From: Heteronotia binoei | Lineage: Eukaryota | DNA: 64,000 nucleotides | Assembly: GCF_032191835.1 (NCBI RefSeq) | Contig: NC_083228.1 | Span: forward strand, 147,312,001 to 147,376,000 | Direction: 5' to 3' | Part shown: in pieces, positions 12,747 through 33,595 of the stretch | Layout: the number at the start of each line of letters is the position of its first letter | Numbering within the stretch: the first letter of the stretch is position 1 | Translations under genes and position numbers: made by a program | The notes under the pieces: generated by a model | The model's input: the letters and a program-made list of their open reading frames with translations, nothing else | What the model was told of the DNA's origin: nothing | Databases searched by the model: none

Positions 12747-14953
12747 TCAAAAGGTTTCTCCCGTGTGGGTCCTCTGATGCCGTTGAAAATGGCCATTCCG
12801 ACTGAATCTCTTTCCACACTCTGAGCATTTAAAAGATTTTTCCCCTGTGTGGGTTCTCTGATGCCGTTGAAGACTACCACTGAAACTGAATCTCTTTCCA
12901 CACTCTGAGCATTTAAAAGATTTTTCCCCTGTGTGGGTTCTCTGATGCCGTTGAAGACTACCACTGAAACTGAATCCCTTCCCACACTCTGAGCATTCAA
13001 AAGGTTTCTCCCCTGTGTGGGTTCTCTGATGTAGTTTTAGAGTGCCACTGAAACTGAATCTCTTTCCACACTCTGAACATTTAAAAGATTTCTCCCCTGT
13101 GTGGGTTTTCTGATGCCGTTGAAGACTGCCACTGTGACTGAATCTCTTCCTACACTCGGAGCATTCAAAAGGTTTCTCCCCTGTGTGGGTTCTCTGATGC
13201 TTTTGAAGATCACCACTGTGACTGAATCTCTTTCCACACTCTGAACATTCAAAAGGTTTCTTCCCTGTGTGGGTTCTCTGGTGCAGTTGAAGATGGCTAC
13301 TCTGACTGAATCTCTTTCCACACTCTGAGCATTCAAAAGGTTTCTCTCCTGTGTGAGTTCTCTGATGCCGTTGAAGATGGTCACTCCGACTGAATCTCTT
13401 TCCACACTCTGAGCATTCAAAAGGTTTCTCCCCTGTGTGCGTTCTCTGATGCTGTTTTAGAGTGCCTCTGTCACTAATTTTTTTCCCACATTCTGAACAT
13501 TCAAAAGGTTTCTCCCCTGTGTGGGTTCTCCGATGCAGTTGAAGATGGCTACTATTACTAAATCTCTTTCCACACTCTGAGCATTTGAAAGGTTTCTCTC
13601 CTGTGTGGGTTCTCTGATGCAGTTTTAGAGTATTACTGTGACCGAATCTCTTCCCACACTCTGAACATTCAAAAGGTTTCTCCCCTGTGTGGGTTCTCTG
13701 ATGCAGTTTTAGAGTTCCACTCTGACTGAATCTCTTTCCACACTCTGAGCATTCAAAAGGTTTCTCCCGTGTGTGGGTTCTCTGATGCAGTTGAAGACGG
13801 CTACTCTGACTGAATCTCTTTCCACATTCTGAGCATTCAAAAGGTTTCTCCCCTGTGTGAGCTCTCTGATGCTGTTGAAGAATGCCACTCCGACTGAATC
13901 TCTTTCCACACTCTGAGCATTCAAAAGGTTTCTCCCCTGTGTGAGTTCTCTGATGCTGCTGAAGGTGGCCACTCCAACTGAATCTCTTTCCACACTCTGA
14001 GCATTCAAAAGGTTTCTCCCCTGTGTGCGTTCTCTGATGTTGTTTTAGAGTGCCTCTCTCACTAAATTTTTTTCCACATTCTGAACATTCAAAAGGTTTC
14101 TCCCTTGTGTGGGTTCTCTGATGCAGTTGAAGATTGCTACTCTGACTGAATCTCTTCCCACACTCTGAGCATTCAAAAGGTTTTTCCCCTGTGTGAGTTC
14201 TCTGATGCCGTTGAAGATGGCCACTCCGACTGAATCTCTTTCCACACTCTGAGCATTCAAAAGGTTTCTCCCCTGTGTGGGTTCTCCGATGCAGTTGAAG
14301 ATGGCTACTATTACTAAATCTCTTTCCACACTCTGAGCATTTGAAAGGTTTCTCTCCTGTGTGGGTTCTCTGATGCAGTTTTAGAGTATTACTGTGACCG
14401 AATCTCTTCCCACACTCTGAACATTCAAAAGGTTTCTCCCCTGTGTGAGTTCTCTGATGCCGTTGAAGATTGCCACTCTGACTGAATCTCTTTCCACACT
14501 CTGAGCATTCAAAAGGCTTCTCGCATGTGTGAGTTCTCTGATGCCGTTGAAGATGGCCACTGTGACTGAATCTCTTCCCACAGTCCAAACATTCAAAAGG
14601 TTTCTCTCTTGTTTGGGTTCTCTGATGCAGTTTTAGAGTGCTACTGTGATTGAATCTTTTTCCATGGTTTGAACATTCAAAATGTTTCTTGCCTCTGTGT
14701 ACTCTTTGGTGCACTAGGAGCTGTGATCTATTTCTGAAGTACTTGCTACACTGAGTGGATGTACATGTCTTAATTATTCTCTTCTTTGGAAAATGTACAT
14801 TAAACCTTTTTCCTTCTCTCTTCTCATCCATGCTGCTGCCTTCTTTTCTCTTAGGTCTGCCTCGATTTCTACTGTTTTCTTTCAAGTCTTGAACTCGATC
14901 TGGCAGCTGCTGCTCAAATTCCTCACCCTCCTCGTTACTCTGATCATCCCCTG
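12747..14953 (-). CDS. Zinc-finger exon of gene B (22 canonical C2H2 fingers plus 1 atypical and 1 degenerate)
   Basis: ORF 12747..14885 extends in frame to acceptor TTATTCCAG|CAGGGG at 14953; 84-bp repeats. Confidence 0.96.
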
Positions 14954-32312: not shown

Positions 32313-33595
32313 TCAAAGGGTTTCTCCCGTGTGGATCCTTTGATGCCGTTGAAGACTGCCACTTTGACTGAATCTCTTTCCACACTCTGAGCATTCAAAA
32401 CATTTCTCCCCTGTGTGAGTTCTCTGATGCTGTTGAAGATAGCCACTCCAACGGAATCTCTTTCCACACTCTGAGCATTCAAAAGGTTTCTCCCCTGTGT
32501 GCGTTCTCTGATGCCGATTTAGAGTACTACTGCGACCGAATCTCTTTCCACACTCTGAGCATTCAAAAGGTTTCTCCCCTGTGTGGGTTCTCTGATGCCG
32601 ATTTAGAGTACTACTGCGACTGAATCTCTTTCCACACTCTGAGCATTCAAAAGGTTTCTCCCCTGTGTGGGTTCTCTGATGCTCTTGAAGATTGCCACTG
32701 AAAATGAATCTTTTCCCACACTCTGAACATTCAAAAGGTTTCTCCCCCGTGTGGGTTCTCTGATGCAGTTTTAGAGTATTACTGCAACCGAATCTCTTTC
32801 CACACTCTGAGCATTCAAAAGGTTTCTCCCCTGTGTGGGTTCTCTGATGCCGTTGAAGTCTGCCACTGAAAATGAATCTCTTCCCACACTCTGAGCATTT
32901 GAAAGGTTTCTCCCCTGTGTGGGTTCTCTGATGCTGTTTTAGAGTACTACTGTGAACGAATCTCTTTCCACACTCTGAGCATTCAAAAGGTTTCTCCCCT
33001 GTGTGAGTTCTCTGATGCTGTTGAAGATGGCCACTCTGACTGAACCTCTTTCCACACTCTGAGCATTCAAAAGGTTTCTCCCCTGTGTGGGTTCTCTGAT
33101 GGCGTTGAAGACTGCCACTGAAAATGAATCTCTTCCCACACTCTGAGCATTCAAAAGGTTTCTCCCCTGTGTGAGTTCTCTGATGCTGTTGAAGATGGTC
33201 ACTCCGACTGAATCTCTTTCCACACTCTGAGCATTCAAAAGGTTTCTCCCTTGTTTGGGTTCTCTGATGCAGTTTTAGAGTGCTACTGTGACTGAATCTT
33301 TTTCCATGGTTTGAACATTCAAAATGCTTCTTGCCTCTGTGTACTCTTTGGTGCACAAGGAGCTGTGATCTATTTCTGAAGTACTTGCTACACTGAGTGG
33401 ATGTACATGTCTTAATTATTCTCTTCTTTGGAAAATGTACATTAAACCTTTTTCCTTCTCTCTTTTCATCCATACTGCTGCCTTTCTTTCTCTTAGGTCT
33501 GCCTCGATTTCTACTGTTTTCTTTCAAGTCTTGAACTCGATCTGGCAGCTGCTGCTCAAATTCCTCGCCCTCCTCGTTTCTCTGATCATCCCCTG
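32313..33595 (-). CDS. Zinc-finger exon of gene C (11 canonical fingers)
   Basis: ORF 32313..33527 extends in frame to acceptor at 33595. Confidence 0.96.

What the first reader, a model, noticed from the sequence alone, without database searches (positions are those of the whole stretch)
12747..33595. Sister genes B and C: near-identical scaffolds but completely rewritten finger arrays (PRDM9-like turnover)
B and C share introns, the same CR1 insertion with the same junction, an almost identical pre-array peptide and the same terminal frameshift, so they duplicated recently. Yet B has 22 fingers and C has 11, and the recognition helices (-1..+6) are not colinear. B: [49 protein letters not shown]…RNGHFQR. 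C: [56 protein letters not shown] x2, WSGYLQQ, QSGSLQR. Backbones ([15 protein letters not shown]) are homogenised as an 84-bp minisatellite; variation concentrates at -1, 2, 3 and 6. B fingers 3-4 (14256-14423) recur as 12-13 (13500-13667), exactly 9x84 bp apart. Inference: a fast specificity-shuffling system (intra-array recombination plus selection at contact residues) in a reptile SCAN-KRAB cluster.
Basis: partly seen in the sequence, partly recalled or inferred. Interest (0 to 1): 0.75.

Follow-up and report, generated by a model that had tools for sequence, protein, structure and literature searches.

The report
Gecko zinc-finger paralogs with reshuffled arrays
Two neighbouring, recently duplicated gecko SCAN-KRAB zinc-finger repressor genes are about 95% identical everywhere except in their DNA-reading finger arrays, which were reshuffled from a shared stock of finger types; this is a clear but ordinary example of how this gene family evolves.

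Summary
B (ORF 12747-14885, 22 fingers) and C (32313-33527, 11 fingers) lie on the minus strand in ~19-kb tandem duplicates. Both have SCAN, KRAB-A and finger exons. They share a CR1-like LINE insertion that the paralogous sites in gene A and at 62597-63696 lack. They also share one 1-bp frameshift that ends the array. Their scaffolds are 94.6-95.9% identical.

The arrays are not colinear. The best order-preserving fit of C into B costs 98 mismatches, equal to the shuffled-order mean (98 +/- 5.4, p = 0.52). No two consecutive units correspond.

"Completely rewritten" overstates it. A unit tree pairs B15-C1, B8-C10, B3/12-C6 and B22-C11, and 7 of 11 C helices have a match within one residue in B. 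The finger types predate the split and were reordered, amplified or lost.

A 194-bp exact patch nine units apart in B, a mosaic unit (B19) and a 3x168-bp repeat in D show ongoing intra-array exchange.

Contact codons give omega 2.4 (p = 0.006 against 1); the other codons give 0.28. Recent unit pairs alone give about 1.4, not significantly above 1.

There is no PR/SET domain, so "PRDM9-like" is an analogy only. Array length could not be checked against reads. Earlier scan notes report the same pattern on other DNA of this genome. Verdict: new member of a known kind.

The parts
12747..14948 (-). Gene B last exon. It holds the linker peptide, 2 degenerate N-terminal fingers and 22 canonical C2H2 fingers. 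The stop codon is at 12747-12749.
   Evidence: ORF. Finger parsing. Pfam zf-C2H2/zf-H2C2_2 with 22 stretches. Exon start about 14948 from tblastn with gecko homolog P0001.
12750..14597 (-). B canonical finger array: 22 x 84-bp units (B1 = 14597-14514 ... B22 = 12833-12750).
12578..12746 (-). Two decayed finger remnants downstream of the shared 1-bp frameshift of gene B.
   Evidence: The TRF array extends to 12578. The alignment with C shows the same deletion and colinear remnants.
13498..13691 (-). 194-bp tract identical to 14254-14447 (B12-B13 = B3-B4). It is a candidate recent intra-array gene-conversion patch.
   Evidence: Units elsewhere in the same register differ by 6-20 of 84.
14254..14447 (-). 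Partner copy of the 194-bp exact tract (B3-B4).
15903..16040 (-). Gene B exon 4, a spacer exon between KRAB and the fingers.
   Evidence: tblastn with P0001, 56.5% identity.
17770..17886 (-). Gene B KRAB-A exon.
   Evidence: Pfam KRAB 1.9e-18. Motif scan.
18166..22913 (-). CR1-like LINE insertion in the intron between exon 2 and the KRAB exon of B. It is internally tandem-duplicated (18223-20493 matches 20612-22893).
   Evidence: Pfam RVT_1 1.6e-34. Boundaries set against the empty site in A. Octamer repeat at the 3' end. Internal duplication at 96.1%.
23693..23810 (-). Gene B exon 2 (approximate limits).
   Evidence: tblastn with P0001; a weak match, so the limits are inferred.
24083..24511 (-). 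Gene B first coding exon, with the SCAN domain.
   Evidence: Pfam SCAN 7.5e-36. tblastn.
32313..33590 (-). Gene C last exon: the same linker peptide and 2 degenerate fingers as B, then 11 canonical fingers. The stop codon is at 32313-32315.
32316..33239 (-). C canonical finger array: 11 x 84-bp units (C1 = 33239-33156 ... C11 = 32399-32316).
32143..32312 (-). Post-frameshift finger remnants of gene C, colinear with those of B.
34545..34676 (-). Gene C exon 4.
37072..37188 (-). Gene C KRAB-A exon.
   Evidence: Pfam KRAB 9.6e-18.
37468..39830 (-). The same CR1-like LINE insertion in gene C, as a single copy.
40939..41367 (-). Gene C SCAN exon.
   Evidence: Pfam SCAN 3.3e-36.
50241..51717 (-). 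Gene D finger array, used as the outgroup. It has 16 units, an in-frame stop in unit 14, and units 1-6 forming a 3 x 168-bp higher-order repeat.

Best explanation
B and C are tandem paralogs of a lineage-specific gecko SCAN-KRAB-C2H2 zinc-finger gene. They arose by a ~19-kb segmental duplication about 5% neutral divergence ago. The last exon of each is an 84-bp coding tandem repeat with near-identical backbone DNA, which is a good substrate for misaligned exchange.

Since the duplication, the two arrays have been restructured in place. Whole units or two-unit blocks were duplicated and deleted by unequal exchange or slippage. Short tracts were copied between units within an array by gene conversion. 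The material was a stock of finger types that already existed in the common ancestor. On top of this, DNA-contact codons (-1, +2, +3, +6) accumulate amino-acid changes at or above the neutral rate, while structural codons are under purifying selection.

The result is two proteins with the same effector domains but different predicted DNA targets. The likely role, inferred from family knowledge only, is sequence-specific repression, possibly of transposable elements. This is the standard birth-and-death evolution of KRAB/SCAN poly-zinc-finger genes, not a PRDM9 homolog and not a special system.

Shown here: the duplication, the non-colinearity, the shared finger types, the recent exchange tracts and the rate contrast between contact and backbone codons. 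Inferred: the direction and number of events, positive selection as opposed to relaxed constraint on the youngest changes, expression, and function.
For: - Domains: SCAN, KRAB and 22 or 11 C2H2 fingers. The exon map follows the Paroedura picta homolog P0001.
- Sister status: the shared LINE insertion with an empty site in A and at 62597-63696, the shared 1-bp frameshift, and 205 B=C sites against 64 and 77.
- Scaffold divergence: 94.6-95.9% identity. Non-array coding pS is about 0.055 and pN about 0.013 (exon 4 excluded).
- Non-colinearity: mismatches along either diagonal are 8-16 per unit, against about 4 expected. The best monotone fit is 98 against a null of 98 +/- 5.4, p = 0.52. A unit-level local alignment finds no run of two or more corresponding units between any pair of arrays.
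- Shared repertoire: the tree pairs B15-C1, B8-C10, B22-C11, B3/12-C6, B17-D11, B11-D9 and C3-D12. Seven of 11 C helices lie within one residue of a B helix. The T-L-K helix block carries a linked synonymous CTT>CTA marker in B, C and D units.
- Recent exchange: the 194-bp exact patch; B19 combines the three-change F codon of one type with the T-L-K block of another; B7 and B14 differ by 4 mismatches; D1-6 form 3 x 168 bp. Clustering at 4 mismatches or fewer implies at least 7 young units in B, 3 in C and 5 in D.
- Selection: NG86 dN/dS is 1.6-1.7 at contact codons and 0.13-0.16 in the backbone. Fitch changes per site are 6.75 against 2.9, p = 0.0056. GY94 omega is 2.41 against 0.28, likelihood-ratio statistic 7.45, p = 0.006.
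- Literature: the same mode is described for poly-zinc-finger paralogs (PMC2604467, PMC3126818, PMC5363842). Lizard SCAN-KRAB expansions are known (PMC3971581).
Against: - No read-level check of array length or of the exact patch was possible.
- No expression or splicing evidence was obtained.
- Omega tests on a single tree are inflated by recombination among units, which is demonstrably present.
- For the youngest pairs, contact omega is about 1.4 and not significantly above 1.
- With no genome-wide access, I could not exclude that some units came from other paralogs rather than from in-place shuffling.
- The complete lack of shared adjacent units at only 5% scaffold divergence needs many events, which is more than typical reports (median SD of finger number 1.94 among paralogs, PMC2604467).
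Confidence: 0.78

Rival explanations
1. Array transplant. After the duplication, most of one array (B or C) was overwritten by ectopic gene conversion or unequal crossing-over with another family member elsewhere in the cluster or genome. On this reading the arrays differ because they are not orthologous, not because they were shuffled in place.
For: - Similarity drops abruptly exactly at both array edges: the pre-array is 97.7% identical, yet B1 vs C1 differ by 12 of 84.
- No two consecutive units correspond between B and C.
- Several B units have their nearest relative in D rather than in C (B11-D9 4 mismatches, B17-D11 6 mismatches).
- In the Paroedura picta locus L001, a paralog is 100% identical to its neighbour up to the end of finger 2 and then carries an unrelated array of about 19-21 fingers. 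This shows that breakpoints inside arrays occur in this family.
Against: - Both flanks of the B and C arrays show the same ~95% identity, so two breakpoints inside the array would be needed.
- Several B-C unit pairs differ by 2-3 of 84, as expected for units that split with the genes.
- There is no exact tract longer than 63 bp between B and C, nor any of 60 bp or more between either and D.
- No donor is visible in the window.
Confidence: 0.15
2. Assembly artefact. The 22-finger length of B, or the 194-bp exact patch, was produced by mis-assembly or by polishing of a 2-kb tandem repeat. The true arrays would then be more alike.
For: Exact 194-bp identity inside a repeat whose other units differ by 6-20 of 84 in that register is what mis-mapped polishing reads can create. 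No public run holds more than 17% of the sampled words of the stretch, so nothing independent supports the assembly.
Against: - Both ORFs are intact through 712 and 404 codons, with perfect 84-bp phase and no N.
- The units are individually distinct.
- C and D show the same kinds of young duplicates.
- The non-colinearity involves all units, not one patch.
- A 2-kb array is shorter than ordinary long reads (general knowledge).
Confidence: 0.05
3. Neutral drift of redundant copies. The contact-residue differences reflect relaxed constraint rather than selection for new specificities, and one or both genes may be on the way to pseudogenes, like D.
For: - For the youngest unit pairs, contact omega is about 1.4 and not distinguishable from 1.
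- D already has an in-frame stop and degenerate terminal fingers.
- Recombination inflates the omega tests.
- No expression data were obtained.
Against: - Backbone codons are clearly constrained: omega is 0.13-0.28.
- The non-array exons have pN/pS of about 0.24.
- All 33 fingers keep their zinc ligands.
- Contact omega over the whole unit tree is 2.4, p = 0.006.
Confidence: 0.12

Closest known systems
Lineage-specific KRAB / SCAN-KRAB poly-zinc-finger gene clusters (mammalian KZFPs; Anolis SCAN-KRAB-ZNF expansion)
   Same: - Tandem gene clusters made by segmental duplication.
- Effector domains (SCAN, KRAB-A) on small 5' exons and all fingers in one 3' exon.
- Paralogs differ mainly in finger number and in residues -1, 3 and 6, which show positive selection (PMC2604467).
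- Finger duplication and deletion is the commonest path of divergence (PMC3126818).
- Mouse paralogs show 'drift and shift' of arrays, with repeated blocks inside arrays repetitive enough to be annotated as satellite MMSAT4 (PMC5363842).
- Anolis has about 240 SCAN-KRAB and 89 SCAN zinc-finger models. Its KRAB consensus lacks the central Leu of MLE (PMC3971581); here the motif reads M-R-E.
   Different: - The host is a gecko. The only relative found by the word search is a Paroedura picta protein at 56% identity.
- An 11-finger difference with no shared adjacent units, at only ~5% scaffold divergence, is at the extreme end of what those papers report.
- Backbone DNA diversity among units (0.067-0.11 per nt) is lower than in the P. 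picta homolog (0.12-0.15).
PRDM9 zinc-finger coding minisatellite
   Same: - An 84-bp coding tandem repeat.
- Variation is concentrated at DNA-contact codons, with omega above 1.
- The array is restructured by unequal exchange and gene conversion (PMC2794550, PMC3890296).
   Different: - There is no PR/SET or SSXRD domain. A SCAN domain is present instead, in a multi-copy tandem family rather than a single meiotic gene.
- Unit backbones still differ at synonymous sites (pS 0.24-0.31).
- Allelic hypervariability is untested.
- Nothing links these genes to recombination.
Paroedura picta LOC143827124 and its tandem neighbours (locus L001)
   Same: The same SCAN-KRAB-finger architecture and linker peptide family. 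The terminal fingers are likewise cut off by a frameshift into the next unit. One neighbouring paralog has an identical scaffold but an unrelated array.
   Different: In P. picta the switch is a single sharp breakpoint after finger 2, with 100% identity upstream. In the window, both flanks are equally diverged (~5%) and the units are interleaved.

Membership tests
SCAN-KRAB C2H2 poly-zinc-finger genes (KZFP-type) | N-terminal SCAN domain | tested here: met
   Pfam PF02023: B 7.5e-36, C 3.3e-36.
SCAN-KRAB C2H2 poly-zinc-finger genes (KZFP-type) | KRAB-A box on its own small exon | tested here: met
   Pfam PF01352: B 1.9e-18, C 9.6e-18, also A and D.
SCAN-KRAB C2H2 poly-zinc-finger genes (KZFP-type) | Tandem C2H2 fingers with TGEKP-type linkers, all in one 3' exon | tested here: met
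   22 and 11 canonical fingers, 28 codons each.
SCAN-KRAB C2H2 poly-zinc-finger genes (KZFP-type) | Spliced, expressed mRNA that joins the SCAN, KRAB and finger exons | not testable with these tools
Exons were mapped one by one by homology only.
SCAN-KRAB C2H2 poly-zinc-finger genes (KZFP-type) | KAP1/TRIM28 recruitment and repression | not testable with these tools
   The KRAB reads M-R-E where mammals have M-L-E. PMC3971581 notes the same for the lizard consensus and leaves the function open.
PRDM9 | PR/SET methyltransferase domain (and SSXRD) upstream of the fingers | tested here: not met
   The SCAN, KRAB and finger exons match only those Pfam families. The two short spacer exons were mapped by homology only, and the Pfam list of the full-length homolog P0001 has SCAN, KRAB and finger families only.
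PRDM9 | 84-bp coding minisatellite with positive selection at contact codons | tested here: met
   Period 84. Contact omega 2.41, p = 0.006. Caveat: recombination inflates this test.
PRDM9 | Hypervariable alleles (array length and composition) within populations | not testable with these tools

The most novel reading that the evidence does not exclude
The finger exons of these gecko SCAN-KRAB genes may be true hypervariable coding minisatellites. Their array length and unit order would then be polymorphic between individuals, at rates near those of PRDM9, in ordinary multi-copy repressor genes. Breakpoints inside arrays would also seed the tandem gene duplications themselves, as the P. picta locus hints. 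If so, squamates would offer a natural system for measuring how fast new DNA-binding specificities are generated against their very active transposons.
Probability: 0.2. Interest if true: 0.55.

Novelty: new member of a known kind. Interest (0 to 1): 0.3.

Why it matters
This is a clean, well-dated example. The scaffolds are about 5% diverged, with a shared LINE insertion and a shared frameshift as markers. It shows all the known routes of zinc-finger array change at once: unit and two-unit duplication, deletion, short-tract conversion, a mosaic helix and contact-residue substitution. It sits in a squamate lineage where this family is large but barely studied. It adds no new principle. Its value is as a calibration point for array turnover rates, and as a candidate locus for long-read population genotyping and for binding assays against gecko transposon families.

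Tried and rejected
Searches used gene C or other parts of B, and the arrays were analysed only in local scripts.\n- Simple colinearity with deletions. Rejected by the monotone unit alignment and its permutation test.\n- A 9-unit tandem duplication as the source of B12-13 = B3-4. Rejected because the neighbouring units in that register differ by 6-20 of 84.\n- Recent B-C or B/C-D inter-array conversion. There is no exact tract longer than 63 bp.\n- Array-specific concerted evolution since the split. Backbone pS within B (0.31) and within C (0.24) brackets the between-array value (0.27), so wholesale homogenisation is not supported.\n- Exon 4 dN/dS.
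Full report
**What is in the window.** The window consists of tandem segmental duplicates of about 19 kb (self-BLAST). All the genes lie on the minus strand.

Each unit carries one SCAN-KRAB-C2H2 zinc-finger gene. Pfam finds SCAN in B (7.5e-36) and in C (3.3e-36). 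It finds KRAB-A exons in A, B, C and D (about 1e-17 to 2e-18; motif scan). It finds 22 and 11 C2H2 fingers in the last exons of B and C.

The only relative found by the word search with C's pre-array peptide is a Paroedura picta (gecko) SCAN-KRAB-ZNF, LOC143827124 (P0001). A tblastn with its non-finger part maps five coding exons in each gene:
- B: 24511-24083, about 23810-23693, 17886-17770, 16040-15903, 14948-12747.
- C: 41367-40939, about 40747-40526, 37188-37072, 34676-34545, 33590-32313.

Exons were handled one by one by reference. I built and searched no joined model. A third array, D (50241-51717), has 16 units and an in-frame stop in unit 14. It served as the outgroup.

**Are B and C recent sisters? 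Yes.**
- Unique sequence is 94.6% identical in the 3' flank, 95.1% in the intron next to the array, 95.9% around KRAB and 95.5% in the SCAN/promoter region. There, A is only 91.3% and 91.7% identical to B and C, and 205 sites group B with C against 64 and 77 for the alternatives.
- A CR1-like LINE sits at the same site in B (between 18165 and 22914, internally duplicated) and in C (between 37467 and 39831). Pfam gives RVT_1, and there is an octamer repeat at its 3' end. The site is empty in A and in the stretch 62597-63696, probably D's upstream part.
- Both arrays end at the same 1-bp deletion in a linker, followed by two colinear decayed fingers.
- Non-array coding sequence has pS about 0.055 and pN about 0.013. 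The exon 4 row of that call was misregistered and is excluded.

**Are the arrays non-colinear? Yes.** At 5% divergence, corresponding 84-bp units should differ by about 4 bases.
- Along the N-anchored and C-anchored diagonals they differ by 8-16.
- The best order-preserving placement of C's 11 units into B's 22 costs 98 mismatches. That equals the mean for shuffled unit order (98 +/- 5.4, p = 0.52).
- A unit-level local alignment finds no run of two or more corresponding units between any two arrays.
- The refutation condition 'colinear alignment explained by simple deletions' is therefore not met.

**But the arrays are not rewritten from scratch.**
- A maximum-likelihood tree of all 49 units joins units across genes: B15-C1 (2 mismatches), B8-C10, B3/B12-C6, B22-C11, the F-type group B20/21 with C2/5/7, and across to D (B17-D11, B11-D9, C3-D12).
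- Seven of 11 C helices have a B helix within one residue, and one is identical.
- The T-L-K helix block carries a linked synonymous CTT>CTA change in every unit of B, C and D that has it. This marks common descent rather than convergence.
- So the finger types predate the B/C split, and partly the D split. Since then they have been reordered, amplified (at least 7 young units in B, 3 in C, 5 in D at 4 mismatches or fewer) and lost. The Q-S-S-x-L-Q-L, E/D-R-G-T-L-K-Q and H-S-G-D-L-Q-K types are absent from C.

**Direct traces of intra-array exchange.**
- A 194-bp tract (13498-13691 = 14254-14447) is exactly identical nine units apart, while the units elsewhere in that register differ by 6-20 of 84. 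This fits a short conversion tract, not a 9-unit duplication.
- B19 combines the three-nucleotide F codon (TTC) of one type with the T-L-K block of another.
- B7 and B14 differ by 4 bases.
- D units 1-6 are three copies of a 168-bp two-finger block.
- There is no exact tract above 63 bp between B and C, and none of 60 bp or more between either and D.

**Selection.**
- Diversity peaks at codons -1, +2, +3 and +6, with lesser peaks at -2 and +5.
- Nei-Gojobori dN/dS is 1.6-1.7 at contact codons and 0.13-0.16 in the backbone.
- Parsimony changes per site are 6.75 at contact first and second positions against 2.9 at backbone third positions (p = 0.0056).
- A GY94 model on a fixed tree gives omega 2.41 for contact codons and 0.28 for the rest. 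The likelihood-ratio test against omega = 1 gives 7.45, p = 0.006.

Caveats on these tests:
- The demonstrated recombination among units inflates them.
- For the youngest pairs alone, contact omega is about 1.4. That is not above 1, though it is far above the rate of the other codons (p = 0.001-0.004).
- 'Homogenised backbone' is only partly right. Many core units differ by 0-3 of 60 backbone bases. Yet backbone pS among units (0.24-0.31) is about five times the gene divergence, and it is no lower within arrays than between them.

**What could not be tested.** No public run holds more than 17% of the sampled words. Array length, the exact patch, expression and polymorphism therefore remain unverified.

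**Context.**
- Positive selection at -1, 3 and 6, and differing finger numbers among young paralogs, are established for poly-zinc-finger genes (PMC2604467).
- Finger duplication and deletion is described as a common path of divergence in the family, and a change in finger number is the most frequent difference between orthologs (PMC3126818).
- Mouse paralogs show 'drift and shift' of arrays, with repeated blocks (PMC5363842).
[quoted passage not shown] Here the motif reads M-R-E.
- In the P. picta locus L001, one paralog is 100% identical to its neighbour up to finger 2 and then carries an unrelated, longer array. Breakpoints inside arrays therefore occur in this family. This keeps an 'array transplant' rival alive at about 15%.
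- Earlier notes of this scan report the same pattern on other DNA of this genome. They are leads, not support.

**Verdict.** The locus is a new member of a known kind, of modest interest.

Noticed in passing
L001:12540-14300 and L001:20135-22700 (Paroedura picta, CM110992.1): There are three tandem 7.6-kb SCAN-KRAB-ZNF copies. Copies 1 and 2 are 100% identical across the stretches compared, including the whole finger array. Copy 3 is 100% identical to copy 2 from at least 750 bp upstream of the array up to the end of finger 2, and then carries an unrelated array of about 19-21 fingers. This is either a very recent recombination breakpoint inside the array or an assembly join.
   Followed up: partly
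window 18223-20493 and 20612-22893: The CR1-like LINE in B's intron is itself tandemly duplicated (96.1% identity between the two copies), while C has a single copy. One copy keeps a 544-codon open RT frame (18287-19921).
   Followed up: partly
window 50241-51717: Array D has an in-frame stop in unit 14 and degenerate units 13, 15 and 16. Its units 1-6 are a 3 x 168-bp higher-order repeat. Most of its units carry a gene-specific Q or H at backbone residue 5. D15-D16 align with the out-of-frame remnants of B and C, so the B/C frameshift removed fingers that D keeps in frame.
   Followed up: partly
window 1-2920 and 61099-64000: The two ends of the window are 92.9% identical, rising to 96.4% around the KRAB exon. 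Gene A's upstream part and the KRAB-bearing stretch at 62622-62738 therefore form a second sister pair without the LINE. This suggests a higher-order duplication of about 61 kb. If D uses that KRAB exon, about 7 kb of AT-rich sequence (about 55300-62600) separates it from D's next mapped exon at 55173-55307.
   Followed up: no
window 17770-17886, 37072-37188: The KRAB-A box reads M-R-E where the mammalian KAP1-binding cluster reads M-L-E. PMC3971581 notes the same for the Anolis consensus.
   Followed up: no
window 56889-58772: A 942-bp tandem duplication (95.2% identity). Each copy holds a 113-bp x 2 tandem repeat (57332-57554 and 58274-58496).
   Followed up: no
window 12750-12833 vs 32316-32399: The positionally orthologous last fingers, B22 and C11, differ at 10 of 84 bases and 7 of 28 residues. 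Six of the base changes fall in the helix codons, against about 4 bases expected from the scaffold divergence.
   Followed up: partly
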